Source of the DNA: Octopus sinensis | Lineage: Eukaryota | Length of the DNA stretch: 64,000 nucleotides | Direction: 5' to 3' | NCBI RefSeq assembly: GCF_006345805.1 | Contig: NC_043023.1 | Location: forward strand, 19,282,001 to 19,346,000 | Part shown: positions 17,677 to 63,693 of the stretch, piece after piece | How positions within the stretch are numbered: position 1 is the first letter of the stretch | How the letters are laid out: each line of letters opens with the position of its first letter | Translations under genes and position numbers: made by a program | Notes under the pieces: generated by a model | Database searches by the model: none | What the model was told of the DNA's origin: nothing | The model's input: only the letters and a program-made list of their open reading frames with translations

Positions 17677-19663
17677 ATCTACCCCAGTATATCACTGCTA
17701 TTTTATTTTATCAACTCTAGAATGATGTAAAGTTAGTGTTAACATTATAGTTCCATCGACATCTTGGAGGTTATCAACCCCACAACGATGAAAGGTAAAG
17801 TTAGTGTTAGTCTTCTATTATAATTCCATTGACATCTTGGATGTTTTATAGGAATATTAAATCGACCCCAGTATTTCACTGCTACTTTATTTTATCAACC
17901 CCACAACAATGAAAGGTAAAGTTAGTGTTAGTCTTCTATTATAATTCCATTGACATCTTGGATGTTTTATAGGAATATTAAATCTACCCCAGTATATCAC
18001 TGCTACTTTATTTTATCAACCCCACAACAATGAAAGGTAAAGTTAGTGTTAGTCTTCTATTATAATTCCATTGACATCTTGGATGTTTTATAGGAATATT
18101 AAATCTACCCAGTTATATCACTGCTACTTATTTTATCGACCCCCAACAATGAAAGGTAAAGTTAGTGTTAATCTTCTATTATAATTCCATTGACATCTTG
18201 GATGTTTTATAGGAATATTAAATCTACCCCAGTATATCACTGCTACTTATTTTATCAACCCCACAACAATGAAAGGTAAAGTTAGTGTTAGTCTTCTTTA
18301 TAATTCCATTGACATCTGAATGTTTTATAGGAATATTAAATCTACCCCAGTATATCACTGCTACTTTATTTTATCAACCCCACAACAATGAAAGGTAAAG
18401 TTAGTGTTAGTCTTCTATTATAATTCCATTGACATCTTGGATGTTTTATAGGAATATTAAATCTACCCCAGTATATCACTGCTACTTATTTTATCGACCC
18501 CACAACAATGAAAGGTAAAGTTAGTGTTAGTCTTCTATTATAATTCCATTGACATCTTGGATGTTTTATAGGAATATAAATCTACCCCAGTATATCACTG
18601 CTACTTTATTTTATCAACCCCACAACAATAAAAGGTAAAGTTAGTGTTAGTCTTCTATTATAATTCCATTGACATCTTGGATGTTTTATAGGAATATTAA
18701 ATCTACCAACCCCAGTATATCACTGCTACTTTATTTTATCAACCCCACAACAATGAAGTAAAGTTAGTGTTAGTCTTCTATTATAATTCCATTGACATCT
18801 TGGATGTTTTATAGGAATATTAAATCTACCCCAGTATATCACTGCTACTTTATTTTATCAACCCCACAACAATGAAAGGTAAGTTAGTGTTAGTCTTCTA
18901 TTATAATTCCATTGACATCTCTGGATGTTTTTTAGGAATATTAAATCTACCCCAGTATATCACTGCTACTTTATTTTATCGACCCCACAACATGAAAGTA
19001 AAGTTAGTGTTAGTCTTCTATTATAATTCCATTGACATCTTCGATGTTTTTTAGAATATTAAATCTACCCCAGTATATCACTGCTACTTTATTTTATCAA
19101 CCCCACAACAATGAAAGGTAAAGTTAGTGTTTCGTCTTCTATTATAATTCCATTGACATCTTGGATGTTTTATAGGAATATTAAATCTACCCCAGTATAT
19201 CACTGCTACTTTATTTTATCAACCCCACAACAATGAAAGGTAAAGTTAGTTTATCTTCTATTATAATTCCATTGACATCTTGGATGTTTTTTAGGAATAT
19301 TAAATCTACCCCAGTTATATCACTGCTACTTTATTTTATCACCCCACAACAATGAAAGGTAAGTTAGTGTTAGTCTTCTATTATAATTCCATTGACATCT
19401 TGGATGTTTTATAGGAATATTAAATCTACCCCGTATATCACGCTACTTTATTTTATCAACCCCACAACAATGAAAGGTAAAGTTAGTGTTAGTCTTCTAT
19501 TATAATTCCATTGACATCTTGGATTTTTTATAGGAATATTAAATCTACCCCAGTATATCACTGCTACTTTATTTTATCAACCCCACAACAATGAAAGGTA
19601 AAGTTAGTGTTAGTCTTCTATTATAATTCCATTGATGTTCTGGATGTTTTATAGGAATATTAA
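17677..19663. repeat. 121-bp satellite array 1 (~16 monomers)
   Basis: Tandem aatgaaaggtaaagttagtgttagtcttctattataattccattgacatcttggatgttttataggaatattaaatctaccccagtatatcactgctactttattttatcaaccccacaac; the first unit is degenerate. Confidence 0.97.
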
Positions 19664-19803
19664 CCCACTAACATTTAATTCAGCCATGTCTAACCCAAGT
19701 CTTATGCTCAAAACGGCAAAATCCCACCCAAAATTTCATTCTAAAATAAACAGTCAAAGTGTGTGTGTCTATGTGTGTGTGTACAAGGTCTGATCAGAAT
19801 GTG

Positions 19804-19855
<52 letters not shown>

Positions 19856-19999: not shown

Positions 20000-20034
<35 letters not shown>

Positions 20035-20464: not shown

Positions 20465-20466
20465 TA

Positions 20467-20524
<58 letters not shown>

Positions 20525-20876
20525 ATATATATATGTATGTATATATATACATACATAGATAGATACGTGCATACACACACTCATGTACATACATACATAT
20601 ACACATTTACATATATAAATACACACATCCATACATATATAAACACATACATACATACATATATAAATACATACATCCATACATAAACACATACATACAT
20701 ATATATATATATACACACATAAATATACATATGCACACACACACATAAATATACATATGCACACACATACATATATAAACACATACATACATATATAAAC
20801 ACATACATACATATATACACATATATATACATACACACATACATATATAAACACATACATACATACACACACAGAC
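20465..20876. repeat. (TA)n plus (TACA)n compound microsatellite
   Basis: Directly visible. Confidence 0.85.
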
Positions 20877-22194: not shown

Positions 22195-22585
22195 TTTTCA
22201 CTGAGTGAGTGCTGGTGGCACATAAAAAGCACCATCAGTTCGTGGCCGTTTTCGCCTGACCCCCGTGCCGGTGGCACATAAAAAGCACCATCAGTTCGTG
22301 GCCGTTTGCCAGCCTCGCCTGACCCCCGTGCCGGTGGCACATAAAAAGCACCATCCGATCGTGGCCGTTTTCCACACTCGTCTGGCCCCCGTGCCGGTGG
22401 CACGTAAAAAGCACCCACTACACTCACGGAGTGGTTGGCGTTAGGAAGGGCATCCAGCCGTAGAAACATTGCCAGATCAGACTGGGCCTGGTGCAGCCTT
22501 CTGGCTTCCCAGATCCCAGTTGAACCATCCAACCCATGGTAGCATGGAAAGTGAACGCTAAACGATGATGATGATGATGATGATT
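22195..22585 (+). mobile_element. family C element with internal ~56-63-bp tandem repeats
   Basis: 4 x gccggtggcacataaaaagcacc..., then the conserved 3' end and a (GAT)n tail. Confidence 0.8.
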
Positions 22586-22880
22586 CTCAGTGGGGAAACA
22601 CAGATTTTGTGGAGTGAGGATAAGAAGATGCAAAAGAAAAGAGACAGACTTTTATTCGAGGAAAGGTGATACATAAACAAAACACTGCTCATGTGAGGCA
22701 AATATCAAACAGGAATCAAGACAAACCAATCAGCAAATCCTTGTACATAATTATCAATAATCAATAATCAATGACCATATTATATATTTACAGAGTTTTA
22801 TCCTTCACAATCAAGGCTAAGATGGAGCAGCAATTGTAATGATAACAATTCTGGTAACAAGAGGTTTCTTACAGAAATAC

Positions 22881-25800
22881 AAATCTACCCCAGTATATCA
22901 CTGCTACTTTCTTTTACCAACCCCACAAGGACGAAAAGTAAAGTTAGTGTTAGTCTTCTATTGTAATTCCATTGACATCTCGGATGTTTTATAGGAATAT
23001 TAAATCTACCCCAGTATATCACTGCTACTTTATTTTATCAACCCCACAGCAATGAAAGGTAAAGTTAGTGTTAGTCTTCTATTATAATTCCATTGACATT
23101 TCAGATGTTTTATAGGAATATTAAATCTACCCCAGTATATCACTGCTACTTTATTTTATCAACCCCACAGCAATGAAAGGTAAAGTTAGTGTTAGTCTTC
23201 TATTATAATTCCATTGACATTTCAGATGTTTTATAGGAATATTAAATCTACCCCAGTATATCACTGCTACTTTATTTTATCAACCCCACAGCAATGAAAG
23301 GTAAAGTTAGTGTTAGTCTTCTATTATAATTCCATTGACATTTCAGATGTTTTATAGGAATATTAAATCTACCCCAGTATATCACTGCTACTTTATTTTA
23401 TCAACCCCACAGCAATGAAAGGTAAAGTTAGTGTTAGTCTTCTATTATAATTTCATTGACATCTTGGATGTTTTATAGGAATATTAAATCTACCCCAGTA
23501 TATCACTGCTACTTTATTTTATCAACCCCACAGCAATGAAAGGTAAAGTTAGTGTTAGTCTTCTATTATAATTCCATTGACATCTCGGATGTTTTATAGG
23601 AATATTAAATCTACCCCAGTATATCACAGCTACTATATTTTATCAACCCCACAACAATGAAAGGTAAAGTTAGTGTTAGTCTTCTATTATAATTCCATTG
23701 ACATCTTGATGTTTTATAGAATATTAAATCTACCCCACTATATCACTGCTACTTATTTTATCCACCCCACAACAATGAAAGGTAAAGTTAGTGTTAGTCT
23801 TCTATTATAATTCCATTGACATCTGGATGTTTTATAGAATATTAAATCTACCCCAGTATATCACTGCTACTTTATTTTATCAACCCCACAACAATGAAAG
23901 GTAAAGTTAGTGTTAGTCTTCTATTATAATTCCATTGACATCTTAATGGTTTATAGAAATATTAAATCTACCCCAGTATATCACTGCTACTTTATTTTAT
24001 CACCCCACAACAATGAAAGGTAAAGTTAGTGTTAGTCTTCTATTTAATTCCATTGACATCTTGATGTTTTATAGAAATATTAAATCTACCCCAGTATATC
24101 ACTGCTACTTTATTTTATCAACCCCACAACAATGAAAGGTAAAGTTAGTGTTAGTCTTCTATTATAATTCCATTGACATCTTGGATTATAGAAATATTAA
24201 ATCTACCCCAGTAATATCACTGCTACTTTATTTTATCAACCCCACAACAATGAAAGGTAAAGTTAGTGTTAGTCTTCTATTATAATTCCATTGACATCTT
24301 GGATGTTTTATAGAAATATTAAATCTACCCCAGTATATCACTGCTACTTTATTTTATCCACCCCACAACAATGAAAGGTAAAGTTAGTGTTAGTCTTCTA
24401 TTATATTCCATTGACATCTTGGATGTTTTATAGAAATATTAAATCTACCCCAGTATATCACTGCTACATTATTTTATCGACCCCACAACAATGAAAGGTA
24501 AAGTTAGTGTTAGTCTTCTATTATAATTCCATTGACATCTCGGATGTTTTATAGAAATATTAAATCTACCCCAGTATATCACTGCTACATTATTTTATCG
24601 ACCCCACAACAATGAAAGGTAAAGTTTGTGTTAGTAATTCTATTATAATTCCATTGACATCTTGGATGTTTTATAGAATATTAAATCTACCCCAGTATAT
24701 CACTGCTACTTTATTTTACCAACCCCCCACAACAATGAAGGTAAAGTTAGTGTTAGTCTTCTATTATAATTCCATTGACATCTCGGTGTTTTATAGGAAT
24801 ATTAAATCTACCCCAGTATATCACTGCTACATTATTTTATCGACCCCACAACAATGAAAGGTAAAGTTAGTGTTAGTCTTCTATTATAATTCCATTGACA
24901 TCTCGGATGTTTTATAGGAATATTAAATCTACCCCACTATATCACTGCTACATTATTTTATCCACCCCACAACAATGAAAGGTAAAGTTAGTGTTAGTCT
25001 TCTATTATAATTCCATTGACATCTTGGATGTTTTATAGAAATATTAAATCTACCCCAGTATATCACTGCTACTTTATTTTATCAACCCCACAACAATGAA
25101 AGGTAAAGTTAGTGTTAGTCTTCTATTATAATTCCATTGACATCTTGGATGTTTTATAGAAATATTAAATCTACCCCAGTATATCACTGCTACTTTATTT
25201 TATCAACCCCACAACAATGAAAGGTAAAGTTAGTGTTAGTCTTCTATTATAATTCCATTGACATCTTGGATGTTTTATAGAAATATTAAATCTACCCCAG
25301 TATATCACTGCTACTTTATTTTATCAACCCCACAACAATGAAAGGTAAAGTTAGTGTTAGTCTTCTATTATAATTCCATTGACATCTGGATGTTTTATAG
25401 AAATATTAAATCTACCCCAGTATATCACTGCTACTTTATTTTATCAACCCCACAACAATGAAAGGTAAAGTTAGTGTTTTCTTCTATTATAATTCCATTG
25501 ACATCTTGGATGTTTTATAGAAATATTAAATCTACCCCAGTATATCACTGCTACTTTATTTTATCAACCCCACAACAATGAAAGGTAAAGTTAGTGTTAG
25601 TCTTCTATTATAATTCCATTGACATCTTAATGGTTTATAGAAATATTAAATCTACCCCAGTATATCACTGCTACTTTATTTTATCAACCCCACAACAATG
25701 AAAGGTAAAGTTAGTGTTAGTCTTCTATTATAATTCCATTGACATCTTGGATGTTTTATAGAAATATTAAATCTACCCCAGTATATCACTGCTACTTTAT

Positions 25801-26653
25801 TTTATCGACCCCCCAACAATGAAGGTAAGTTAGTGTTAGTCTTCTATTATAATTCCATTGACATCTTCGATGTTTTTTAGGAATATTAAATCTACCCCAG
25901 TATATCACTGCTACTTTATTTTATTAACCCCACAACAATGAAAGGTAAAGTTAGTGTTAGTCTTCTATTATAATTCCATTGACATCTTGGATGTTTTTTA
26001 GGAATATTAAATCTACCCCAGTATATCACTGCTACTTTATTTTATCAAACCCAAACAATGAAAGGTAAAGTTAGTGTTAGTCTTCTATTATAATTCCATT
26101 GACATCTTAGATGTTTTATAGAAATATTAAATCTACCCCAGTATATCACTGCTACTTTATTTTATCAACCCCACAACAATGAAAGGTAAAGTTAGTGTTA
26201 GTCTTCTATTATAATTCCATTGACATCTCGGATGTTTTATAGAAATATTAAATCTACCCCAGTATATCACTGCTACTTTATTTTATCAACCCCACAACAA
26301 TGAAAGGTAAAGTTAGTGTTAGTCTTCTATTATAATTCCATTGACATCTTGGATGTTTTATAGAAATATTAAATCTACCCCAGTATATCACTGCTACTTT
26401 ATTTTATCAACCCCACAACAATGAAAGGTAAAGTTAGTGTTAGTCTTCTATTATAATTCCATTGACATCTCGGATGTTTTATAGGAATATTAAATCTACC
26501 CCAGTATATCACTGCTACTTTATTTTATCAACCCCACAACAATGAAAGGTAAAGTTAGTGTTAGTCTTCTATTATAATTCCATTGACATCTTGGATGTTT
26601 TATAGGAATATTAAATCTACCCCAGTATATCACTGCTACTTTATTTTATCAAC
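22881..26653. repeat. 121-bp satellite array 2 (~31 monomers)
   Basis: Same monomer and same orientation as array 1, with local variant blocks. Confidence 0.97.
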
Positions 26654-27651
26654 CACAGAAGGATAATAGTAACTATCAAAAGACATTTATGATCAGCTTT
26701 GTGCAAAATATTAATAAGAATGATTTGAAAACAAGCACGTAGCTGAAACCTTTTTCACACCAGTCCGTCCAAGACCACCCCTACTTCTGTGATACAACAT
26801 TCCTATTTTAAATTGATCTAAATTAAAACTTTCATCCATCAAAATTTCATGTTATGTTCTAAACACAAGTTTAAGAATTTTACTAAATTCTTCCATTATT
26901 TTAGAAATTAATTGAAACAAGGGTAAGATATTTCAGCAGAAATATGGTAACCAAAGGGTTAAAGTGATCTTAATTTAAAACCTCCCATCAATATTTCATG
27001 TTAATTTATGTTTAATTTATGTTAATTCATGTTAATTTATGTTTAATTTATGTTTAATTTATGTTAATTTATGATCCAAACACCAGCTGAATAGGGACAA
27101 AGTTATTTTACTAAATTCTTCATAATTTTCGAAATTAATTGAAAGAAAGGCAGTGGGTTTCAGCAGAAAAATGGTAACAAAAGGTGTAGATAATACATAA
27201 ACACTAGCAAAAACATAGCGGAACATATATGCATGTGTAGGTGTGAGATGATCATGGTATAAAACAGTAATAATAATAATAATAACAACCACAATAAAAT
27301 AATAATAATGATATTGGGGAACAGAACAAAAATTTATGTATATATATATATATATATATAAATAAAAGTAATTTGAAATAAAAAAAAGAAAACAAAAAAC
27401 AAAGAAAACATAAATAAAACAGGAAAAAATATCAAAAATATACAAAACCACTTAGAAAAAAAAAAACAAAACAGAGGGAGAGTTTTTATAACAAAAAATA
27501 TACAGAAATACAAAAGCTAGAAAGGCGCTGGTGTATATACTATGGTTTGTAATGTATACAGACCTTATGTATATAATATATACATACATGCACAATGGAC
27601 ACATACACATGTTTATGCAGTTACACACATATGCATTATAAATATGTAACA

Positions 27652-30601: not shown

Positions 30602-33514
30602 ATACATTTGGATTTACAAAAGGTTTACAAGATTTTTAGCCAAACAGTTTCACTCCCAGACGCCGTGCACACACAATTCCATATTTCTGATTTGTAATAA
30701 CAACAACAACAATACCAATTCAATTAAAATATTGCATGGGCTGGAGGGGACAAAAGGTTGACTCTACCCAGCTTATTTCATTACCTGACTGATCGTTACT
30801 GTAACGACTCTGCCAGAACAGGATATAACATTTCACAGCTTGTGGTGAGAGATCTATAGCCTATACTTATCATGAACTAAAAGCCAGTGAAAGATCCCAT
30901 CTCTGGGTTGCATTTTTCAGCCATTTCACTGTGGTCATGCTGGAGTACCACCCAGAAGAGTTTTTAGTTAAATGAACTTGACCCCAGGACTTATTCTATC
31001 AATCTCTTCTGCTGAACTGCTAAGCTATGGTGATTTAAACACACCAACCCCATTTGTCAAGTAGTCATGAGGGAACATACAGACATAAAGACACGTAGAT
31101 ATCTATCTACCTGTCTATATACATACAAAGGGTTTGTTTCAATTTCCATCTCCCAAACCCGCTCACCTATAGGGCCATACAATGGGACTGAACACAGAGC
31201 AATGTGGTGGTGGGGACGCAAGCTTCCAACCACAGCCACGCCTGCACCTTTACCCCAATGTTTTTGTATTTCTAAGCCCAGGAGAAAAAGTGTGCCCACA
31301 AGATCCTTTACCAGGGCCTTGGATGAGGAGAAGGTATCCTTAAACTGAAAGCCTAACCTGGATGTTTGCAACAGAATAAAGGGACAGGGAGTCTACTAAA
31401 AAAAAAACCCCAGGGGTGAAGAAGTGGTGGTGGTATTAAACCAGGCAATAGATGAAGTCTGCTACCCATATAGAGGTGGGTGGGTAGGTATTTAAACCCA
31501 GAAGGGAAGCTATATATTCACTTCAAGCAAGACACTCGCTCCTGTCCCTCTACCCTACTTTCACATCCCTCATTACTAGTAGGGGCACTTGGCTTAGTGG
31601 TTAGGGTGTCGGACTCACAGTTGTAAGATTGTGATTTCAATTCCTGGACTGGGCTATGCATCATGTTCTTAATCTGAGCAAAACACTTCAGTTTAGGAGG
31701 CAGGGGTTGATTACATCGACCCCAGTTGCTCAAGTGTAGTACTTATTTTATCAACCCCAAAAGGAAGGAATAATAATAATAATAATAATAATGATGATGA
31801 TAATAATAATAATCCTTTCTATTATAGGCACAAGGCCTGAAATTTTTTGGGGAAGGGGACTAGTTGATTACATTGACCCCAGTGTTTCACTGGTACTTAT
31901 TTTATTGACCCTAAAAGGATGAAAGGCTAAGTCTACCTCGGTGGCATTTAAACTCAGAACACGAGGACGGATGAAATGCTGTGAAGCATTTTGCCCGACG
32001 TGCTAACGATTCTGCTAGTTATGGAACAAGGCTAGCAATTTTGAAGGGAAGGGGCCAAGCCAATTACATCGATCCCAGTATGTGTCTGGTACTTTATTTT
32101 ATTGACCCCAAAACGACGAAAGACAAAGCTGACTTCATCAGAATAATAATAATAATACAAAGTTTTAGTTCATGCACAGCATTTAAAATATTTCAACAAT
32201 TCATTAACATTCATTTTTCATCAATACAATTCAATCGTTTAAAGCCACTTTGTGCTGACAGGTAATCCTAAATCTTACAGTAATATACAGAACAAAGATG
32301 CTTTTTAAAGCTACACACGTGTCATCAAGTACCACACTTACAAACTCTTATAAATGCCGTTGGTGTGTGGGGTTCTGAAATGATTAAGGAGACCAACACA
32401 AGACCGAGAGATCGGATCCAGGTCCAGCAAAAGTGCGTGAACACATACCATGAACAAAACCTATAAGATGACAAACAATCCTGGTGATGACACAAGCTGT
32501 GTATGATGGTGTGGATGTGAGAGAGTTTGGTGACATTCTTGTATTTGATGTGTACAGAGCTTGATAGTATATCTCTCTCACAAACACATGTATACCTATT
32601 TCTTTACTACCCACAAGAGGATAAACACAGAGGGGACAAACAAGGACAGACAAACGGATTAAGACGATTACATCGACCCCAGTGCGTAACTGGTACTTAA
32701 TTTATCGACCCTGAGAGGATGAAAGGTGAAGTCGACCTCGGCGGAATTTGAACTCAGAACGTAACGGCAGACGAAATACTATTTCTTAACTACCCACAAG
32801 GGGCTAAACAGAGGGGACAAACAAACGGATTAAGACGATTACATCGACTCCAGTGCGTAACTGGTACTTTATTTATCGACCCTGAGAGGATGAAAGGTGA
32901 AGTCGACCTCGGCGGAATTTGAACTCAGAACCTAACGGCAGACGAAATACAGCTATGCATTTCGCCTGGCGTGCTAACATTTCTGCCAGCTTGCCGCCTT
33001 AAACACATGTATACCGTCATACGTTTAGCCAAGTAGAATTACATATCTGAAGTATGGCTTCATGCAATTTTAAAATGGCCATATCTGGTCCAAACATTCT
33101 ACCTGTGTTATGATCAAATTGGCCAGAGTTGGCATCTCGTACCTACCCTACAATGCCGATCTAAAAACATACCATCACACCATCAAAATCTCAAAGCTAT
33201 GAGATAACATATGATCAATTCGTAACAATGTGAAGGAATAAGCTTTACATTTGACAAAGTAATCTGACGGTGAAAGGATTAATGTTGACACGAAATGACA
33301 ACTGGACCTAAATTTAGTTTCACAAATGTAAATGATAACCCTACATAGCCAGTAGGGGGTGGCATCATTCGAAAGCTAAAAAAATGATGCAAAGTGCATT
33401 GTGAGCAGCAGTATATAACAACATCCAATAGTTTGATCCATCATGTAATCAGGTGATATATATGTGTGCTTGTGTGTATGTATATATATATATATATTAT
33501 ATATATATATACTC

Positions 33515-33792: not shown

Positions 33793-34771
33793 CACACACA
33801 CACACACACACACATACACATAAGCTGAGGGGACAAATGAAAGAAAGAAGCACTCAACATATTTAGTATACATATTAAAAACAGTTCGATTCGGCCCTAA
33901 GCAACTTAAAAAGTTTCATATAGAAACCTAGGGTATCAGACTCGGTAAACCAAATGGAGAAGATGTAGGAAGTCCGAGATGGCTAACAGAAACTGGGCTA
34001 CACACACATACGTGCATGCATTCATACATACATACATATACATAACTTCAGCTGTAGAGATTTGTATATAAGCAGTCTTTATAATAATAGTACCGACAAT
34101 ATTTATAATGAGTTTATGATCAACAAGATCGGCATGCATTAACACTGGGTCATCAAAAATATGTGAAAATACAGAAACAAAAAAAAAAAAAAAAATACAA
34201 GTTGTACATCAATTATGATAATTACAGACACACAAAAAAATATAATTAATGAAGGTAATATAAATAATAATAATAATAATCCTTTCTACAATAGGCACAA
34301 AGCCTGAAATTTTAGGGGAGGGTCTAGTCGATTGCATCGACCCCAGTACTCCACTGGTACTTAATTTATCGACCAATAGAGGATGAAAGGCAAAGTCGAC
34401 CTTGGCGGAATTTGAACTCAGAACGTAGCAGTCGACAAAATACCATTAAGTATTTTGTCCAACGTGCTAACGATTCTGCCAGCTCGCTACTTTAATAATG
34501 ATGATGATGATGATGATGATGACTTCAAATTTTGGCACAAGGCCAAAAAGTTTGGGGAAGGGCCAAAGTTAATTACATTGACCTCAGTGCTCAACTGTTA
34601 CTGATTTAATTGACCCCGAAAGGATAAAAAGCTAAGTCGACTTTGGTGGAATTTGAACTCAGAATGTAAGGACGGACAAAATGCTGCTAAGCATTTCATC
34701 CGGCATGCTAACGATTTTGCCAGCTCACTGCCTCAACAACAACAACAATAATAATAATACTTTTGGTCCAA

Positions 34772-52201: not shown

Positions 52202-54000
52202 CACACACACACATATATATATATATATACACACACATATATATTTATACACATACACACACATATGCACATATATATACTCATACATATATACATATGC
52301 AGACACACACATACACAAATGTGTATATATAAAAAAATGTTGATGGAAATATAATGAGTGGGGGAGAGGGTAATGTATTGAGTACTGATGTAGAGAAAAT
52401 CTGCCAAAGGCTTCAGACAGTCTCGCAGAACAGGAACGAAAGGGGACCCATCCCTCCGTCCGAACAGTCTGTGACACCAACAGTTGTATCACTTGGCTGC
52501 CTTAAGAATCATAATATCCTTTTTCAGACTAGAAATATGGGTGTTTTGTTCATCATCCTTAAACAACCTTTATTCAAAAACCCTTTTGAATGGGATGGGT
52601 TACTCAAGCTGAAGAAAATTCTAACCACCGGGCCCCACCTTCAAGGTCATGCGCTGTTTATCTTGATATGAGATCACTATGTTGTGCACATATGGTTGTG
52701 ATGCATGTGCCTGGTGTACTGTATCAGATGGGTAGTCATGATGGGTATATTGGGGTTCGTATATTTGTACCCCAGCATTACTTTGAGGGTGTGTGCTGTT
52801 CTCTCACTCAATAATGATAATAATAATAATCCTTTCTACTTGAAGCAACAAGGCCTCAAATTTGGGGGAAGGGATTAAGCCGATTACATCCACCTCAGAA
52901 CGCAACTGGTACTTATTTAATTGACCCCGAAAGGATGAAAGGCAAAAAGTCGACCTCAGTGGAATTTGAACTCAGAACTTAGTGGCAGACGAAATACCGC
53001 TAAGTATTTCACCCGGCGTGCTAACGATTCTGCCAGCTCACTGCCTTAAATATAATAATATAATAATAATAATATGCAGCAAGGAAGGTGTTTATAAGCC
53101 ATTTAAAAATATACAAAAACCATTAGATTCACTTCAAAATTCCATGCTGCACGGAATTTTGTCAGCGAACAGGTTGCGGTCTCAAAGCAATGAAAATATT
53201 TTGGCAAATTAAATTTAAATGTTGAAGTGAATCTAACAAATTTTGTGTGTTTTCAAATGGCTTATAAACACCTTCCACGCTGCAGTTGTTTTTGTTTCAG
53301 CACACGATCTCAGATCAGGTCACATGCTATGCAAGTACATCTCTGTAATAATAATATGAAAGCTTGGTAAATTTAGAATGTAGCAGTTCACTGTTGGGTG
53401 TAACCATCTTCATGATGGAGGGTTTTTTAGGTCATAGCATTGAACCATTAACACTGTGGCCCTAAGATGGTGCTGAACCTTGCATTCTGTCAGACTGGAG
53501 CAAAAAACTTTGTCCAAGGATTTAGCACAATGATGGCCAGTGCTTAATAAAAATAATAATAATAATAATGGTTTCAAATTTTGGCACAAGGCCAGAAGGT
53601 TTGGAGGAGGGAGTAAGTTGATTACAATGACCCCAGTGTTCAACTGTTACTTATTTTATCGACCCCACAATGATGAAAAACCAAGTCAACCTTGGCTGAA
53701 TTTGAACTCAGAATGTAAAGACGGACGAAATACTGCTAAGCATTTCACCCAGCATTCCAACAATTCTGTCAGCTCAATAATAATCTTTCTAATATAAGGC
53801 ATAGGGCCTGAAATTTTGAGGGAGGGGGCAAGTCGATTAGATCGACCCCCAGTACGCAACTGATACTTAATTTATCAACCCCAAAAGAATGAAAGGCAAA
53901 GTCGACCTCGGCGGAATTTGAACTCAGAACGTAGTGACAGGTGAAATACCTTTAAGCATTTCATCCAGCGTGCTAACGATTCTGCCAGCTTGCTACCTTA
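51370..54000 (-). mobile_element. second cluster of ~5 family B SINEs, sense on the minus strand
   Basis: Copies at ~51370-51545, 51590-51770, 52825-53050, 53560-53770 and 53780-54000. Confidence 0.8.
51810..52078 (-). other. candidate non-coding (3' UTR) exon
   Basis: Acceptor ttttattgataactgcaaatttacgtttcag| followed by unique sequence. The donor is uncertain (AAG|gcaatt near 51912 or TAG|gtcagc at 51809). Confidence 0.3.
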
Positions 54001-54017
54001 ATAATAATATTAATAGT

Positions 54018-54500
54018 CATCATCATCATTTAACATCCGCTTTCCATGCTGGCATGGGTTGGACGGTTCAACTGGGGTCTGGGAAGCCAGAAGGCTGCAC
54101 CAGGGGCCCAGTCTGATCTGGCAGTGTTTCTTCTACAGCTGGGTGCCCTTCCTAACGCCAACCACTCCGTGAGTGTAGTGGGTGCTTTTTACGTGCCAGA
54201 CGAGGCTGGCAAACAGCCATGATCAGATGGCGCTTTTTACGTGCCACCGGCACGGGGACCAGACGAAGCTGGCAACGGCTACGAACGGATGATGCTTTTT
54301 ACGTGCCACCGGCAAGGAAGCCAGTCGGGGCAGCGCTGGCAACGGCCACGTTCGGATGGTTCTCTTACGTGCCACCGGCACTGGTATCACAAGCTACAAA
54401 TTCCATTGATGTTGACAGATTACGATTTTGATTTTGATTTTCACTTGCCTCAACAGGTCTTCGCAAGTGGAGTTTTGTGTCCCGAGAAGGAAAGGAATGC
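54018..54500 (-). mobile_element. family C element ~200 bp downstream of the candidate 3' UTR donor
   Basis: Reverse copy with internal repeats. Diverged copies also lie at ~29560-29722, 43510-43700 and 45810-45940. Confidence 0.8.
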
Positions 54501-54535: not shown

Positions 54536-54569
<34 letters not shown>

Positions 54570-54775: not shown

Positions 54776-54971
54776 TCAGTGACGCCGATATTCTCTCTCT
54801 CTTTCCCGATCTCTGTCGCGGTCTCTGTGCCGCTCTTCGTGGTAGCGGTCGCGGTCCCGACTCCGCTCTCTGTACTCGCGGTCGCGACTGCGAGAACGGT
54901 GTCTGCGACTGCTCTTCTCTCTGTCCCGGTCCCTCTCCCTCTCGCGGGAACGAGATCGACGAGTGCTGCTC
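54776..54971 (-). CDS. CPSF6: CPSF6 last coding exon, RS/RD/RE-rich tail with stop codon
   Basis: Acceptor ctgtttcag| at 54972. The phase-2 AA from the upstream exon plus G gives Lys, then SSTRRSRSRERERDRDREKSSRRHRSRSRDREYRERSRDRDRYHEERHRDRDRDREREREYRRH*. This ends like vertebrate CPSF6 (...REREYRHR*). TGA at 54778-54776; frame continuity checked by hand. Confidence 0.93.
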
Positions 54972-56144
54972 CTGAAACAGAACAAGGGTACACCGATGAC
55001 ATACGGCAGATAAAAATCTTGAGGAAAATTCAAACATTTACATCTCCCCTCCCTATCAGAAACCCCATAACTCTGCCCCACTTCTTTCCTTTATCTTTTA
55101 CTCGTTTCAGTCATAGGACTGTAGCAATAACCATTTTAGCCATTTTGAAATGTGGCGCGAATTGGCAATATGACGTAATGTCTTTGCCGAAGAATTATCA
55201 TTTTCGTTTTTTTCCATTGGTTAATATAACTGCTCATATAAAGATTCTAAAAGTTTCGGAAAAATATTTGTAATGGATTTCGATTCTTTTAAGTCAAGTT
55301 GAGCAGTTATAAAAACCCTGGATTTGGGGAAAAACTTTAGTGTTTGTTGGATGTCACTGCACTCCACGACACTCACTCTTTTGAGATATTGGTAATTTTC
55401 ATGCCATGTCTAAAGTTAATCACAAATCTATTATGATTTGTTGGTTAATGTATTAGCTAGAATTGAGAAATCAGTTAATGAAATTATAGTCGTTCTTCTT
55501 CACGACAAAGTTATCTTTCTTTCCTACTGTAAATAATATAAAATGTTATATTTATATAATAAAACTAATTAAAAAGAAAATGTTTCTCTTCACGTTTGTT
55601 TTTCAACTGAGCATAAATAAATATGCATTTCTGTAATCCTTAATTTATGTTTTCTTATAGTGGTTTAAAGGACACGAAGAAAATATTATACATACATGTC
55701 ATTAATATTCATAGCGTTTCATGCGTATATGTCTATATGACATTATAACTGCAGTTAGGGTTTTAGGTATAATGATAACACTAAGTATAAGTGACGTTAA
55801 TCATATTCTCCCTTACTCAGAAAGAAACCAAATAAAATAATATAACCTAAGAGAAAGCTTAAGGTAGAATAAGCAAAACTGCCATAGGACTGTGGTCATG
55901 CTGGGGCACAACAATGAAGGGTTTAGTTCAGGGATTCTCAACTATTTTTAATACTATTTTATTCAGGTGGACACCCATCGCGATTCAATGTTTAAAAATC
56001 TAGTTTTATAGAAACTTCTTCCAAAATCCATATTTTATTTTTCACACATAGGTTGAACTATGTAGGGTGTTAGAGAAAGAAACCTGGCTGTTTCTTTCAA
56101 TACATTCCAATACATACATCTAAAGCAAAATTTTTCAGGGGCCC

Positions 56145-56877
56145 TTAACCCTTTCGTTACCAACCTGGCTGAAACTGGCTCTGGCTCTGAGTACAAAGGT
56201 CTTGTTTCCATAAGTTCTGAATTAAAATCTTCCACCAAACCTTAGTCACAATTTATGTTCCTAACACTAGCTTAATGATAACTAAGTTATTTTACTGAAT
56301 TCTTTGTGTTATTTAAAAGTAACTGATAGAAACACAGAGCATCTCAACAGAAATATGGTAACAAAATGGTTAAAATATATAATAGAGAAACAATTCTTAA
56401 CCCTTTTGATACCAACCTGGCTGAAACCACTTCTGGCTCAGAGTAACAAATGTCTTGTTTTCATAAGTTTTGAATTAAAATCTTCCACGAAACCTTAGTC
56501 ACAATTTATGTTCCTAACACTAGCTTAACGATAATTAAGTTATTTTACTAAATATTTTGTTATATTTAAAGTAATTGAAAGAAACACAGAGCATCTCAAC
56601 AGAAATATGGTAACAAAAGGGTTAAAATATATAATAGAGAAACAATTCTTAACCCTTTTGATACCAACCTGGCTGAAACCACTTCTGGCTCAGAGTAACA
56701 AATGTCTTGTTTTCATAAGTTTTGAATAAAAATCTTCCACGAAACCTTAGTCACAATTTATGTTCCTAACACTAGCTTAACGATAATTAAGTTATTTTAC
56801 TAAATATTTTGTTATATTTAAAGTAATTGAAAGAAACACAGAGCATTTCAAAATAAATACAGTGACGAAAGGGTTAA
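56145..56877 (+). mobile_element. piggyBac-type MITE trimer in the CPSF6 last coding intron
   Basis: ttaaccctttcgttacc...gtgacgaaagggttaa with two copies of the spacer; units 2 and 3 are near-identical. Confidence 0.8.
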
Positions 56878-57154
56878 AATACTCTCTGAGTCTCCAATTT
56901 TCTATTTTGCTTGTGTGGACCCCAAAAAATCATATATGACCTCCAGGGTTCATATAGATCCCCCATTGAGAACCACTGATACTGTTTCTCAACCATTTCT
57001 TTATCTGTGGACCCTTTTGATTATTATCATATTCTGGGACCACCACCCCCTCCTTCCAAAATCCCTATTTTGTTTTTCACACATTCACTTGCACTGGTTG
57101 AACCATGAAAAACATTCGGGAAAGAAACCGGTTTCAAAATATTTTTCAGCACTT

Positions 57155-57612: not shown

Positions 57613-57644
57613 TCACTTTTATAATTATATAAAATGTCACTCAC

Positions 57645-57792
57645 TTGGATCCGTACGACTTCTCTTCAATCCCATGGAGCGTGTCCTGTAAAGAACTAAT
57701 CAGGATTTTACATCGATCATCACCTGCAATCTTCGATTGCTTGATCAGTGATATTGCTGTGACAAGTGTCTCAATGGCACTAGCAAAGTCAC
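57645..57792 (-). CDS. CPSF6: CPSF6 (CFIm68) penultimate coding exon, C-terminal helical domain
   Basis: 148-nt exon bounded by ttttacag| and |gtgagt on the minus strand. It reads (G)[48 protein letters not shown](K), matching the recalled vertebrate CPSF6 motif [49 protein letters not shown]. It is too short to appear in the ORF track. Confidence 0.95.
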
Positions 57793-57934
57793 CTGTAAAA
57801 CAAAAGATAAAAGAACCACATTGAATATGGGTAAATAAATAAATGACAATTTCAAAGGCTTCAGGTAAAATAGCAATACTTATTACAGGTAAACAACCAC
57901 ATTAGTTACAAGTCCATGACCACAATGGTAACAA

Positions 57935-60900
57935 ATCAACCCCAAAACAATGAATGGTAAAGTTAGTCTTCTATTATAGTTCCATTGACATCTCGGATGT
58001 TTTATAGGAATATCAAATCTACCCCAGTATATCACTGCTACTTTATTTTACCAACCCCACAACAATGAAAGGTAAAGTTAGTGTTAGTCTTCTATTATAA
58101 TTCCATTGACATCTCGGATGTTTTATAGGAATATTAAATTTACCCCAGTATATCACTGCTACTTTATTTTACCAACCCCACAACAATGAAAGGTAAAGTT
58201 AGTGTTAGTCTTCTATTATAATTCCATTGACATCTCGGATGTTTTATAGGAATATTAAATTTACCCCAGTATATCACTGCTACTTTATTTTACCAACCCC
58301 ACAACAATGAAAGGTAAAGTAGTGTTAGTCTTCTATTATAATTCCATTGACATCTTGGATGTTTTATAGGAATATTAAATCTACCCCAGTATATCACTGC
58401 TACTTTATTTTACCAACCCCACAACAATGAAAGGTAAAGTTAGTGTTAGACTTCTATTATAATTCCATTGACATCAAGGATGTTTTATAGGAAATTAAAT
58501 CTACCCCAGTATAATCACTGCTACTTTTATTTTACCAACCCCACAACAATGAAGGTAAAGTTAGTGTTAGTCTTCTATTATAATTCCATTGACATCTTGG
58601 ATGTTTTATAGGAATATTAAATTACCCCAGTATATCACTGCTACTTTATTTTACCAACCCCACAACAATGAAAGGTAAAGTTAGTGTTAGTCTTCTATTA
58701 TAATTCCATTGACATCTCGGATGTTTTATAGGAATATTAAATCTACCCCAGTATATCACTGCTACTTTATTTTATCAACCCCACAACAATGAAAGGTAAA
58801 GTTAGTGTTAGTCTTCTATTATAAATCCATTGACACCTCAGATGTTTTATAGGAATATTAAATCTACCCCAGTATATCACTGCTACTTTATTTTACCAAC
58901 CCCAAACAATGAAAGGTAAAGTTAGTGTTAGTCTTCTATTATAATTCCATTGACATCTCGGATGTTTTATAGGAATATTAAATCTACCCCAGTATATCAC
59001 TGCTACTTTATTTTATCAACCCCACAACAATGAAAGGTAAAGTTAGTGTTAGTCTTCTATTATAATTCCATTGACATCTTGGATGTTTTATAGGAATATT
59101 AAATCTACCCCAGTATATCACTGCTACTTTATTTTATCAACCCCACAACAATGAAAGGTAAAGTTAGTGTTAGTCTTCTATTATAATTCCATTGACATCT
59201 TGGATGTTTTATAGGAATATTAAATCTACCCCAGTATATCACTGCTACTTTATTTTATCAACCCCACAACAATGAAAGGTAAAGTTAGTGTTAGTCTTCT
59301 ATTATAATTCCATTGACATCTTGGATGTTTTATAGGAATATTAAATCTACCCCAGTATATCACTGCTACTTTATTTTACTAACCCCACAACAATGAAAGG
59401 TAAAGTTAGTGTTAGTCTTCTATTATAATTCCATTGACATCTCGGATGTTTTATAGGAATATTAAATCTACCCCAGTATATCACTGCTACTTTATTTTAC
59501 CAACCCCACAACAATGAAAGGTAAAGTTAGTGTTAGTCTTCTATTATAATTCCATGACATCTCAGATGTTTTATAGGAATATTAAATCTACCCCAGTATA
59601 TCACTGCTACTTTATTTTATCAACCCACAACAATGAAAGGTAAAGTTAGTGTTAGACTTCTATTATAATTCCATTGACATCAAGGATGTTTTATAGGAAT
59701 ATTAAATCTACCCCAGTATATCACTGCTACTTTATTTTACCAACCCCACAACAATGAAAGGTAAAGTTAGTGTTAGTCTTCTATTATAATTCCATTGACA
59801 TCTCGGATGTTTTATAGGAATATTAAATTTACCCCAGTATATCACTGCTACTTTATTTTACCAACCCCACAACAATGAAAGGTAAAGTTAGTGTGAGTCT
59901 TCTATTATAATTCCATTGACATCTCGGATGTTTTATAGGAATATTAAATCTACCCCAGTATATCACTGCTACTTTATTTTATCAACCCCACAACAATGAA
60001 AGGTAAAGTTAGTGTTAGTCTTCTATTATAAATCCATTGACACCTCAGATGTTTTATAGGAATATTAAATCTACCCCAGTATATCACTGCTACTTTATTT
60101 TACCAACCCCACAACAATGAAAGGTAAAGTTAGTGTTAGTCTTCTATTATAATTCCATTGACATCTCGGATGTTTTATAGGAATATTAAATCTACCCCAG
60201 TATATCACTGCTACTTTATTTTATCAACCCCACAACAATGAAAGGTAAAGTTAGTGTTAGTCTTCTATTATAATTCCATTGACATCTTGGATGTTTTATA
60301 GGAATATTAAATCTACCCCAGTATATCACTGCTACTTTATTTTATCAACCCCACAACAATGAAAGGTAAAGTTAGTGTTAGTCTTCTATTATAATTCCAT
60401 TGACATCTTGGATGTTTTATAGGAATATTAAATCTACCCCAGTATATCACTGCTACTTTATTATCAACCCCACAACAATGAAAGGTAAAGTTAGGTTAGT
60501 CTTCTATTATAATTCCATTGACATCTGGATGTTTTATAGGAATATTAAATCTACCCCAGTATATCACTGCTACTTTATTTTACTAACCCCACAACAATGA
60601 AAGGTAAGTTAGTGTTAGTCTTCTATTATAATTCCATTGACATCTCGGATGTTTTATAGGAATATTAAATCTACCCCAGTATATCACTGCTACTTTATTT
60701 TACCAACCCACAACAATGAAGGTAAAGTTAGTGTTAGTCTTCTATTATAATTCCATTGACATCTCAGATGTTTTATAGGAATATTAAATCTACCCCAGTA
60801 TATCACTGCTACTTTATTTTACCAACCCCACAACAATGAAAGGTAAAGTTAGTGTTAGTCTTCTATTATAATTCCATTGACATCTCAGATGTTTTATAGG

Positions 60901-63693
60901 AATATTAAATCTACCCCAGTATATCACTGCTACTTTATTTTACCAACCCCACAACAATGAAAGGTAAAGTTAGTGTTAGTCTTCTATTATAATTCCATTG
61001 ACATCTCGGATGTTTTATAGGAATATTAAATCTACCCCAGTATATCACTGCTACTTTATTTTATCAACCCCACAACAATGAAGGTAAAGTTAGTGTTAGT
61101 CTTCTATTATAATTCCATTGACATCTTGGATGTTTTATAGGAATATTAAATCTACCCCAGTATATCACTGCTACTTTATTTTATCAACCCCACAACAATG
61201 AAAGGTAAAGTTAGTGTTAGTCTTCTATTATAATTCCATTGACATCTCGGATGTTTTATAGGAATATTAAATCTACCCCAGTATATCACTGCTACTTTAT
61301 TTTACCAACCCCACAACAATGAAAGGTAAAGTTAGTGTTAGTCTTCTATTATAATTCCATTGACATCTCGGATGTTTTATAGGAATATTAAATCTACCCC
61401 AGTATATCACTGCTACTTTATTTTATCACCCCACAACAATGAAGGTAAAGTTAGTGTGAGTCTTCTATTATAATTCCATTGACATCTTGGATGTTTTATA
61501 GGAATATTAAATCTACCCCAGTATATCACTGCTACTTTATTTTATCAACCCCACAACAATGAAAGGTAAAGTTAGTGTTAGTCTTCTATTATAATTCCAT
61601 TGACATCTTGGATGTTTTATAGGAAATTAAATCTACCCCAGTATATCACTGCTACTTTATTTTATCCAACCCCACAAATGAAAGGTAAAGTTAGTGTTAG
61701 TCTCTATTATAATTCCATTGACATCTCAGATGTTTTATAGGAATATTAAATCTACCCCAGTATATCACTGCTACTTTATTTTACCAACCCCACAACAATG
61801 AAAGGTAAAGTTAGTGTTAGTCTTCTATTATAATTCCATTGACATCTTGGATGTTTTATAGGAATATTAAATCTACCCCAGTATATCACTGCTACTTTAT
61901 TTTATCAACCCCACAACAATGAAAGGTAAAGTTAGTGTTAGTCTTCTATTATAATTCCATTGACATCTTGGATGTTTTATAGGAATATTAATCTACCCCA
62001 GTATATCACTGCTACTTTATTTTATCAACCCCACAACAATGAAAGGTAAAGTTAGTGTTAGTCTTCTATTATAATTCCATTGACATCTCGGATGTTTTAT
62101 AGAATATTAAATCTACCCCAGTATATCACTGCTACTTTATTTTACCAACCCCACAACAATGAAAGGTAAAGTTAGTGTTAGTCTTCTATTATAATTCCAT
62201 TGACATCTCGGATGTTTTATAGGAATATTAAATCTACCCCAGTATATCACTGCTACTTTATTTTATCAACCCACAACAATGAAAGGTAAAGTTAGTGTGA
62301 GTCTTCTATTATAATTCCATTGACATCTTGGATGTTTTATAGGAATATTAAATCTACCCCAGTATATCACTGCTACTTTATTTTATCAACCCCACAACAA
62401 TGAAAGGTAAAGTTAGTGTTAGTCTTCTATTATAATTCCATTGACATCTTGGATGTTTTATAGGAATATTAAATCTACCCCAGTATATCACTGCTACTTT
62501 ATTTTATCAACCCCACAACAATGAAAGGTAAAGTTAGTGTTAGTCTTCTATTATAATTCCATTGACATCTTGGATGTTTTATAGGAATATTAAATCTACC
62601 CCAGTATATCACTGCTACTTTATTTATATCAACCCCACAACAATGAAAGGTAAAGTTAGTGTTAGTCTCTATTATAATTCCATTGACATCTCGGATGTTT
62701 TATAGGAATATTAAATCTACCCCCAGTATATCACTGCTACTTTATTTTATCCACCCCACAACAATGAAAGGTAAAGTTAGTGTCAGTCTTCTATTATAAT
62801 TCCATTGACATCTCGGATGTTTTATAGGAATATTAAATCTACCCCAGTATATCACTGCTACTTTATTTTATCCACCCCACAACAATGAAAGGTAAAGTTA
62901 GTGTCAGTCTTCTATTATAATTCCATTGACATCTCGGATGTTTTATAGGAATATTAAATCTACCCCAGTATATCACTGCTACTTTATTTTATCAACCCCA
63001 CAACAATGAAAGGTAAAGTTAGTGTTAGTCTTCTATTATAATTCCATTGACATCTTGGATGTTTTATAGAATATTAAATCTACCCCAGTATATCACTGCT
63101 ACTTTATTTTATCAACCCCACAACAATGAAAGGTAAAGTTAGTGTTAGTCTTCTATTATAATTCCATTGACATCTTGGATGTTTTATAGGAATATTAAAT
63201 CTACCCCAGTATATCACTGCTACTTTATTTTATCACCCCACAACAATGAAAGGTAAAGTTAGTGTTAGTCTTCTATTATAATTCCATTGACATCTCGGAT
63301 GTTTTATAGGAATATTAAATCTACCCCAGTATATCACTGCTACTTTATTTTACCAACCCCACAACAATGAAAGGTAAAGTTAGTGTTAGTCTTCTATTAT
63401 AATTCCATTGACATCTCGGATGTTTTATAGGAATATTAAATCTACCCCAGTATATCACTGCTACTTTATTTTATCCACCCCACAACAATGAAAGGTAAAG
63501 TTAGTGTCAGTCTTCTATTATAATTCCATTGACATCTCGGATGTTTTATAGGAATATTAAATCTACCCCAGTATATCACTGCTACTTTATTTTATCCACC
63601 CCACAACAATGAAAGGTAAAGTTAGTGTTAGTCTTCTATTATAATAGGAATATTTAATCTACCCCAGTATATCACTGCTACTTTATCAACCCC
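57935..63693. repeat. 121-bp satellite array 3 (~47 monomers), inside a CPSF6 intron
   Basis: Same monomer; period checked (aatg at 59029 and 59150). It starts ~140 bp from the 57793 acceptor. Confidence 0.97.

What the first reader, a model, noticed from the sequence alone, without database searches (positions are those of the whole stretch)
17677..63693. The 121-bp satellite is about half derived from the core of a resident SINE
Seen: on the reverse strand the monomer reads actttacctttcattgttgtggggttgataaaataaagtagcagtgatatactggggtagatttaat, which aligns with the family B SINE core actttgcctttcatcctttcggggtcgataaattaagtaccagttacgcactggggtcgatgtaat (roughly 75% over ~65 nt by hand). The SINE copy near 53655 (atcgaccccacaatgatgaaa) looks intermediate. 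The other ~55 bp has no match in the window. Inference: a SINE-core plus flank chimera was captured as a monomer, amplified, and dispersed to at least three same-orientation sites within 46 kb.
Basis: partly seen in the sequence, partly recalled or inferred. Interest (0 to 1): 0.7.

Follow-up and report, generated by a model that had tools for sequence, protein, structure and literature searches.

The report
SINE-derived 121-bp satellite DNA
A 121-bp tandem repeat that fills 18% of this window is built partly from the middle of a common short mobile element (SINE) of the same genome; this is a clear but ordinary case of a jumping-gene fragment turning into satellite DNA.

Summary
Three same-orientation arrays of a 121-bp repeat (about 96 monomers, 11.6 kb) lie at 17672-19670, 22869-26672 and 57935-63715. 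On the minus strand, 67 bp of the monomer aligns to positions 96-162 of the resident ~218-bp SINE at 81% identity. The alignment scores 65, against 15.6 +/- 2.2 for dinucleotide shuffles (z = 23), and the SINE profile hits the monomer at E = 1e-14. The other 54 bp matches nothing: not the SINE head or tail, not the other half of the monomer, not the rest of the window.

The derivation runs from SINE to satellite. Array-edge monomers and one outside contig (L007, 85% to the SINE) keep SINE-like bases that the array interiors have lost. Two of the three SINE CpG sites read TpG in the satellite.

The "intermediate" SINE copy near 53655 is not special (78% to the satellite; other copies 68-81%). 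That the 54 bp is "flank" is untested, because no progenitor locus is in the window.

The arrays share no flanks but do share polymorphisms, and two share an odd edge monomer, so they spread as bare multi-monomer blocks.

SINE-derived satellites are already known in a limpet and in squamate reptiles. This is a new member of a known kind, of modest interest.

The parts
17672..19670 (-). Array A1 of the 121-bp satellite, about 16.5 units. In SINE orientation it ends at ...GGGGTAGATTTAAT (17672).
   Evidence: TRF; monomer segmentation; edges read. The 3' flank is not similar to the 54-bp half. The end abuts the terminus of another interspersed repeat, with ATTAA microhomology.
22869..26672 (-). 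Array A2, about 31.5 units. Variants 72T and 18C are private to this array.
   Evidence: TRF.
57935..63715 (-). Array A3, about 48 units, in the intron just upstream of a CPSF6/7-like exon. Variant 29G is enriched here.
   Evidence: TRF; exon identified.
26561..26672 (-). First (5') edge monomer of A2. It reads TATCCTTCTGTGG where interior monomers read CATTGTTGTGGGG and the SINE reads CATCCTTT(C/T)GGGG.
   Evidence: Homologous to the A3 edge from 26670 (69 bp, 88%, E = 6e-22), but not beyond it.
63624..63715 (-). First (5') edge monomer of A3. It carries the same odd variant as the A2 edge (CTATTGTCCTTCTGGGG).
22842..22945 (-). Last (3') edge monomer of A2. It reads TTTCGTCCTTGTGGGG, with the SINE-like TCC kept.
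58320..60373 (-). Ten-monomer (1.2 kb) block duplication inside A3: 60373-59528 against 59165-58320, 96-100% identical monomer by monomer.
   Evidence: lag-10 identity; variant patterns.
52820..53047 (-). Full-length copy of the resident SINE. It has a head with a B-box-like GAGTTCAAATTCC, a core and an (ATT)n tail, and is preceded by (ATT)n.
   Evidence: nhmmer (E = 1e-50); flanks.
53559..53998 (-). Head-to-tail pair of SINE copies (53559-53775 and 53777-53998).
   Evidence: One search gives identity to the satellite of 78% and 81%, not different from other copies.
34270..34733 (-). Another head-to-tail SINE pair (34270-34490 and 34512-34733).
32596..33000 (-). SINE copy with the second tail type, a perfect 14-bp target-site duplication (GTATACATGTGTTT) and an internal tandem duplication (period 171 bp, 136 nt at 97%). 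It is a two-unit SINE-derived tandem repeat.

Best explanation
The 121-bp repeat is a SINE-derived satellite.

Composition. Each monomer has 67 bp descended from the central body (consensus positions 96-162) of the resident ~218-bp SINE, joined to 54 bp of unidentified origin. It has neither the SINE head (the presumed pol III promoter region) nor the tail, so it cannot move as a SINE.

Most likely history:
1. An old SINE copy close to the family consensus, or a truncated piece of one, lay next to the 54-bp sequence.
2. A 121-bp segment spanning both was tandemly duplicated.
3. Unequal exchange or replication slippage expanded and homogenised the array.
4. Multi-monomer blocks, without their flanks, were then copied to nearby sites in the same orientation, most likely by repair-templated or circle-mediated insertion.

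Shown: the homology and its limits, the direction of derivation, the lack of shared flanks, the shared polymorphisms and shared edge variant, and block duplications inside arrays.

Inferred: the founding duplication, the nature of the 54 bp, and the mechanism of spread. I assign no cellular function; the simplest reading is neutral, self-propagating intronic and intergenic DNA.
For: Homology:
- Score 65 against 15.6 +/- 2.2 in shuffles, z = 23, 81% identity.
- Profile HMM E = 1.2e-14, confined to HMM positions 96-168, with no head or tail hit even at E <= 100 with filters off.

Source copy. The satellite is at least as close to the SINE consensus (81%) as to any single copy (68-81%). Its distance from the consensus equals that of ordinary copies (77-90%). 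This fits an old founder copy near the consensus.

Direction of derivation:
- Edge monomers of A2 (both ends), A3 (5' end) and A1 (penultimate unit) keep SINE bases (TCCTT, CATCG) that interior monomers have replaced by TTGTT.
- The external contig L007 carries the same 54-bp half (51/54). Its SINE-like half is 85% identical to the SINE consensus (CATCCTTCTGGGG, GTACCAG), against 81% for the window satellite.
- SINE CpGs read TpG in the satellite (TCGAT to TTGAT, TCGGGG to TGTGGGG). A few monomers still carry the CpG (position 27 C in 7 monomers, position 60 C in one).

Amplification by unequal exchange:
- Runs of neighbouring monomers share variants.
- Identity in A2 decays with distance.
- A3 contains a ten-monomer block duplication.

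Spread without flanks:
- No flank similarity between arrays.
- Identity within arrays (96.0-97.3%) is about the same as between arrays (95.8-96.4%).
- Polymorphisms are shared across arrays (86 G/A, 27 C/G, 85 T, 76 A) alongside private ones (72T, 18C, 29G).
- A2 and A3 share one odd 5' edge monomer.

Context that makes the first step plausible:
- 15 of the 20 SINE copies sit head-to-tail in 7 clusters.
- One SINE already carries a 171-bp internal tandem duplication at 97% identity.

Precedents: PcH-sat of Patella (118 of 179 bp from a Nin-SINE; PMC11121367) and squamate sSats (PMC10702118).
Against: - No progenitor locus was found, so the 'SINE piece plus adjoining DNA' step is not observed.
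- Unlike most squamate SINE-derived satellites, none of the array ends extends into the remaining SINE sequence.
- The 54-bp half could be SINE tail diverged beyond recognition: SINE 96-218 is 123 bp against a 121-bp monomer.
- Three of the four observed 3' ends fall at one monomer phase. Random block copying does not predict this.
- Only one external sequence could be recovered, of unknown species, and the source organism could not be identified with the tools.
Confidence: 0.8

Rival explanations
1. The whole monomer is SINE. On this reading it is a multimer of 5'-truncated SINE units (body plus tail, positions 96-218), formed by repeated insertion into the preceding copy's (ATT)n tail or by unequal exchange between head-to-tail copies. 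The 54-bp half would be the tail, diverged beyond recognition.
For: - SINE positions 96-218 span 123 bp against a 121-bp monomer.
- SINE copies in this window habitually sit head-to-tail, and almost all are inserted into (ATT)n.
- A collinear short motif exists: TATAATAGAAGA in the satellite against TATAGTAGAAAGGA in the tail, offset by about 4 bp.
Against: - Local and global alignments of the 54 bp, and of the array 3' flanks, to the tail are not better than dinucleotide shuffles (p = 0.15-0.78).
- The profile HMM finds nothing outside positions 91-168 even at E <= 100.
- The SINE-like half kept 81% identity, so an adjoining tail of the same age should still be detectable.
- L007, the more SINE-like variant, has the same non-SINE 54 bp.
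Confidence: 0.1
2. The arrays are cargo, or an internal tandem region, of a non-autonomous mobile element with a defined end, of Helitron, MITE or retroposon type. Transposition seeded them at each site, after which they expanded locally.
For: - Three of four observed 3' ends in SINE orientation (A1 at 17672, A2 near 22880, L007) fall at monomer positions 65-68, which is the 3' limit of the SINE homology. The rough chance of this is about 0.01.
- A2 and A3 start with the same odd unit.
- All arrays share one orientation.
Against: - No conserved terminal sequence lies outside the repeat, and no target-site duplications or terminal inverted repeats were seen.
- Flanks are unrelated.
- The A3 3' end falls at a different phase, about position 30.
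- The A1 end coincides with the terminus of another repeat, with microhomology. This points to a repair junction rather than an element end.
Confidence: 0.08
3. The similarity is chance, or the direction is reversed and the SINE body was captured from a pre-existing satellite.
For: - Both sequences are AT-rich.
- SINE bodies are known to be mosaics of unknown origin.
- The SINE consensus has a 7-bp direct repeat, TCGACTT, at 94-100 and 162-168 that brackets the shared part.
Against: - Chance is excluded: 0 of 2000 shuffles reach the score, z = 23.
- Against reversal: array edges and L007 are more SINE-like than the homogenised interiors, and CpG-to-TpG changes run from SINE to satellite.
- The 20 SINE copies are individually diverged (77-90% to their consensus), which marks an old dispersed family, whereas the satellite is close to that consensus rather than to any one copy.
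Confidence: 0.02

Closest known systems
PcH-sat of the limpet Patella caerulea (PMC11121367)
   Same: A mollusc satellite whose monomer is part SINE and part unmatched sequence: 118 of 179 bp come from a truncated Nin-SINE that lacks the A and B boxes. It is AT-rich, and the parent SINE is dispersed in the same genome.
   Different: The SINE family differs and so does the monomer length (179 against 121 bp). PcH-sat is pericentromeric and makes up to 10% of the genome. Here only three short arrays (2-5.8 kb) are seen, lying in or near a gene, and the genomic abundance is unknown.
SINE-derived satellites (sSats) of squamate reptiles (PMC10702118)
   Same: These are tandem repeats derived from a portion of a SINE. 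They occur at several loci, are homogeneous within and between loci, and longer arrays are more uniform. The proposed route is duplication, then amplification, then concerted evolution, helped by tandem SINE insertions.
   Different: Most sSats have a longer terminal unit that runs on into the rest of the SINE. None of the array ends here does. The sSat units are described as portions of SINEs, whereas 45% of this monomer has no SINE match.
Transposon-derived satellites in general (review PMC6947457; plant retrotransposon-derived arrays PMC7004042)
   Same: An internal piece of a mobile element becomes the repeat unit of a tandem array (titles and abstracts listed).
   Different: Those cases mostly involve LTR retrotransposons, Helitrons or MITEs. 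I did not read these papers beyond their abstracts.

Membership tests
Satellite DNA (tandem repeat family) | Head-to-tail arrays of a unit of about 100 bp or more, with many copies | tested here: met
   Three arrays of 16, 31 and 48 units of 121 bp.
Satellite DNA (tandem repeat family) | Homogeneity within and between arrays (concerted evolution), with local variant runs | tested here: met
   96-97% identity both within and between arrays, array-private variants, and a ten-unit block duplication.
Satellite DNA (tandem repeat family) | High genomic abundance or heterochromatic location | not testable with these tools
   Only a 64-kb window is available. No eukaryotic genome collection is on hand, and two metagenome scans found nothing.
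SINE-derived satellite | Significant homology between the monomer and part of a SINE resident in the same genome | tested here: met
   z = 23 against shuffles; HMM E = 1e-14; 81% identity over 67 bp.
SINE-derived satellite | Direction of derivation runs from SINE to satellite | tested here: met
   Edge monomers and L007 are more SINE-like than interiors, CpG sites read TpG in the satellite, and the satellite is nearest to the SINE consensus.
SINE-derived satellite | Terminal unit continues into the rest of the SINE (typical of squamate sSats), or a progenitor locus exists | tested here: not met
   No head or tail similarity at any array end. This is a common feature of the family, not a defining one, and the arrays here may be secondary copies.
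SINE (the parent element) | Short dispersed copies with a simple-repeat tail and target-site duplications | tested here: met
   20 copies or fragments of about 218 bp with (ATT)n tails. A perfect 14-bp target-site duplication flanks 32596-33000.
SINE (the parent element) | Head derived from tRNA, 5S or 7SL RNA, with a pol III promoter | tested here: inconclusive
   A B-box-like GAGTTCAAATTCC is seen by eye. ARAGORN and Rfam find no tRNA, even below threshold.
CORE-SINE superfamily (octopus OR1/OR2; PMC4824008, PMC4758252) | Central domain homologous to the CORE domain of MIR-type SINEs | tested here: inconclusive
No curated CORE, OR1 or OR2 sequence was available. The family name is left open.

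The most novel reading that the evidence does not exclude
The 121-bp unit (54 bp plus SINE body) may itself be a small mobile or repair-templated unit with a defined end at the SINE-homology boundary. It would seed new arrays at scattered sites, which then expand locally. That would explain why three of four observed array ends fall at one phase, and why arrays carry no flanks.
Probability: 0.08. Interest if true: 0.55.

Novelty: new member of a known kind. Interest (0 to 1): 0.3.

Why it matters
No description of this repeat, or of any octopus or cephalopod satellite, turned up in the paper library I searched.

The window also shows several stages of one process side by side:
- SINEs stacked head-to-tail in (ATT)n.
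- One SINE with a two-unit internal duplication.
- A mature, homogenised, locally dispersed satellite whose array edges keep ancestral bases.

That makes it a neat teaching case for the model of duplication, amplification and homogenisation. It does not change what is known about how satellites arise.

Practically, such arrays complicate repeat annotation (SINE masking will hit half of each monomer) and the assembly of the surrounding gene.

Tried and rejected
1. The 54-bp half as diverged SINE tail. This looked plausible by eye: a 123-bp against a 121-bp length match and a collinear TATAATAGAAGA motif. Shuffle tests reject it for both tail types, for local and global alignment, and for the array 3' flanks. 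The profile HMM also finds nothing.
2. The monomer as a diverged dimer of two ~60-bp SINE-core subunits: rejected (p = 0.36-0.80).
3. The 5' flank of A3 as a tRNA-like head of another SINE, which was my reading by eye. ARAGORN and Rfam report no tRNA or other family anywhere in the window, this flank included. The SINE HMM hits only the edge monomer there, and BLAST finds no other copy of that flank in the window.
4. Flank homology between arrays, which would indicate segmental duplication: none beyond the edge monomers.
5. A1 and A2 as one array split by an insertion. This is unlikely because both facing ends are old degenerate edge units at different phases. For A2 and A3 it is impossible, because a conserved exon lies between them.
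6. Orthologous loci through the CPSF6 exon. Six contigs were fetched (L001-L006). They share only the exon, at 76% DNA identity, and contain neither the SINE nor the satellite.
7. Looking for the satellite elsewhere. A protein-space search with stop-free satellite frames gave one hit, P0120 on contig L007. Two exact-pattern scans of JGI metagenomes gave nothing. A search with a SINE-derived reading frame gave nothing.
8. Naming the SINE superfamily. No supplement with consensus sequences was held, and sequence strings were not found in any relevant paper.
9. Higher-order repeats. TRF reports periods of 240 and 362 bp, but identity by lag shows no clear 2- or 3-unit periodicity, only the single ten-unit duplication in A3.
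Full report
**What is there.** Tandem Repeats Finder reports three arrays of a 121-bp unit at 17771-19663, 22869-26654 and 57962-63645, each 95-97% matched. Walking a consensus monomer along the minus strand and including degenerate edge units gives 17672-19670 (A1, about 16.5 units), 22869-26672 (A2, about 31.5) and 57935-63715 (A3, about 48). Together that is 11.6 kb, or 18% of the window. The minus-strand consensus (31% G+C) is AACTTTACCTTTCATTGTTGTGGGGTTGATAAAATAAAGTAGCAGTGATATACTGGGGTAGATTTAATATTCCTATAAAACATCCGAGATGTCAATGGAATTATAATAGAAGACTAACACT.

**The SINE.** The quoted 'family B core' is not in the window verbatim, but it describes a real dispersed repeat.
- A seed read off an alignment of 12 anchors finds 20 copies or fragments outside the arrays (nhmmer, E from 2e-8 to 3e-51). 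Sixteen of them are on the minus strand.
- The 218-bp consensus has a head with a B-box-like GAGTTCAAATTCC, a body, and a tail ending in (ATT)n. A second tail type also exists.
- Nearly every copy is preceded by (ATT)n or a related trinucleotide repeat.
- Fifteen of the 20 copies sit head-to-tail in seven clusters.
- The copy at 32596-33000 has a perfect 14-bp target-site duplication.
- ARAGORN and Rfam do not recognise a tRNA in the head, even below threshold. 'tRNA-derived' therefore remains my reading, not a result.

**Is the similarity real?** Yes.
- The monomer, tested as a dimer so that rotation does not matter, aligns to SINE consensus positions 96-162 with score 65. Two thousand dinucleotide-preserving shuffles give 15.6 +/- 2.2 with a maximum of 26, so z = 23.
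- Identity is 55/68 = 81%.
- The SINE profile HMM hits the monomer at 43 bits, E = 1.2e-14, over HMM positions 96-168 and nowhere else, even with filters off and E <= 100.

**The other 54 bp.** The sequence is ATTCCTATAAAACATCCGAGATGTCAATGGAATTATAATAGAAGACTAACACTA.
- By eye I thought it might be the SINE tail. SINE 96-218 is 123 bp, close to 121, and a collinear TATAATAGAAGA motif exists.
- That idea fails every test. Local and global alignments to both tail types, to the whole SINE, and to the SINE-like half of the monomer are no better than shuffles (p = 0.14-1.0).
- BLAST with short words finds nothing in the array-masked window.
- Its origin stays unknown.

**Direction of derivation.** Three observations point from SINE to satellite.
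- Edge monomers. Interior monomers read CATTGTTGTGGGG where the SINE reads CATCCTTT(C/T)GGGG. Edge monomers usually escape homogenisation, and here they keep SINE bases: TATCCTTCTGTGG (A2 first), TGTCCTTCTGGGG (A3 first), CGTCCTTGTGGGG (A2 last) and CATCGTTGTGGGG (A1 penultimate).
- An external variant. A protein-space search with stop-free satellite frames returned one ORF, P0120. Its 531-bp ENA metagenome contig (L007) holds 1.3 monomers with the same 54-bp half (51/54). Its SINE-like half is 85% identical to the SINE consensus (CATCCTTCTGGGG, GTACCAG), scores 52 bits, and is followed by unrelated DNA.
- CpG decay. Two of the three SINE CpG sites in the shared part read TpG in the satellite. 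A few monomers still carry the CpG: position 27 C in seven monomers and position 60 C in one.

The satellite is at least as close to the SINE consensus (81%) as to any single copy (68-81%). Its distance from the consensus equals that of ordinary copies (77-90%). The founder was therefore an old copy near the consensus.

**Growth and spread.**
- Neighbouring monomers share variants in runs (72T and 18C in A2). Identity in A2 falls from 96.7% at lag 1 to about 95.7% at distance.
- A3 contains a ten-unit (1.2 kb) block duplication at 96-100% identity. These are the marks of unequal exchange.
- Identity between arrays (95.8-96.4%) is about the same as within arrays (95.9-97.3%). Some polymorphisms are shared by two or three arrays and others are private.
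- Flanks of the three arrays are unrelated, and no array end runs into SINE head or tail.
- A2 and A3 nevertheless begin with the same odd, partly deleted unit (69 bp, 88%, E = 6e-22).
- The arrays therefore look like secondary copies of multi-monomer blocks taken without flanking DNA, not segmental duplications and not the birthplace of the repeat.
- A conserved CPSF6/7-like exon (57639-57800, minus strand) lies between A3 and A2. This rules out a single array split by insertions.

**An unexplained detail.** In SINE orientation, three of the four observed 3' ends fall at monomer positions 65-68, which is exactly the 3' limit of the SINE homology. These are A1 at 17672, A2 near 22880, and L007. 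What follows each is not similar to the 54-bp half. A3 ends at about position 30. The A1 end abuts the terminus of another interspersed repeat with ATTAA microhomology. The rough chance of this phase coincidence is about 0.01. It could mean a defined unit end, a favoured breakpoint in the AT-rich palindrome AATATT, or luck. The SINE consensus also has a 7-bp direct repeat, TCGACTT, at 94-100 and 162-168 that brackets the retained part.

**Context.** The same window shows an earlier stage of the same process. The SINE at 32596-33000 carries an internal tandem duplication with a 171-bp period, 136 nt at 97%. SINE copies also stack head-to-tail in (ATT)n. From memory, not tested here, Dong/R4-type LINEs target (TAA)n. 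The Octopus vulgaris repeat paper lists Dong-R4 among active LINE families (PMC13282606). This would explain the stacking if the window is from an octopus, but no tool result confirms the organism.

**Comparison with what is known.**
- The closest match is PcH-sat of the limpet Patella caerulea. Of its 179-bp monomer, 118 bp come from a truncated Nin-SINE that lacks its promoter boxes, and the remainder is unmatched (PMC11121367).
- SINE-derived satellites of squamates follow the same three-step route. They usually keep a terminal unit that runs on into the SINE, which is not seen here (PMC10702118).
- I found no paper in the library describing an octopus or cephalopod satellite.
- Whether the retained 67 bp belongs to a named SINE superfamily domain could not be settled.

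**Verdict.** This is a SINE-derived satellite, a new member of a known kind. The 'flank' origin of the other half and the mode of dispersal remain inferences, and the proposed intermediate copy is not one. Interest is modest.

Noticed in passing
57639-57800 and about 54779-54975, minus strand: These are the last two coding exons of a CPSF6/7-like gene. The first matches PF25524 (RSLD_CPSF6) and public exons at 96-98% amino-acid identity. The second is an RS/RD/RE-rich end with a stop at 54779. A3 lies in the intron just upstream. A1 and A2 lie more than 28 kb beyond the stop.
   Followed up: partly
32596-33000, minus strand: A SINE copy with a perfect 14-bp target-site duplication (GTATACATGTGTTT) carries an internal tandem duplication with a 171-bp period, 136 nt at 97%. 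It is a two-unit SINE-derived tandem repeat, joined at ATAG microhomology between tail and head.
   Followed up: yes
6342-6728, 31676-32144, 32596-33000, 34270-34733, 35150-35593, 51356-51766, 53559-53998: Fifteen of the 20 SINE copies sit head-to-tail in seven clusters. Nearly all copies are preceded by (ATT)n-type trinucleotide repeats and end in (ATT)n, which suggests insertion into that microsatellite or into each other's tails. Sixteen of 20 are on the minus strand.
   Followed up: partly
3802-4467, 56144-56881, also about 8.9-9.6 kb, 26.75-27.2 kb and 41.7-42.85 kb: A second tandem family with a 252-253-bp unit (2.6-2.9 copies, 93-97%) recurs at five places in the window. One copy lies 75-100 bp from the 5' end of A2.
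   Followed up: no
22209-22415, 49187-49400, 54196-54314, about 2087-2560: Short tandem repeats of 62-67 bp (GTGCCGGTGGCACATAAAAAGCACC...) lie inside another interspersed repeat family. Its copies are 84-88% alike over about 300 bp.
   Followed up: no
9718-10098: A 118-bp unit is repeated 3.2 times at 98% identity. It is G+C-richer than its surroundings.
   Followed up: no
53075-53284: A long hairpin of about 210 bp matches plant miRNA-precursor models on both strands far below their thresholds (48 bits against a gathering score of 211). It is probably a palindromic MITE-like repeat.
   Followed up: no
17519-17667, 9310-9462, 33122-33265: Another interspersed repeat family (about 78% identity between copies). 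The terminus of one copy abuts the end of array A1, with ATTAA/AGGA microhomology at the junction.
   Followed up: partly
13017-15759, 20470-20871, 27642-28720: Large blocks of compound AT/AC-type microsatellite, with G+C down to 23.5% around 26-28 kb.
   Followed up: no
L007 1-531 (ENA ERZ23872221, NODE_259085): A low-coverage metagenome contig of unknown host carries a more SINE-like variant of the satellite next to unique DNA. It is the only trace of the repeat found outside the window.
   Followed up: partly
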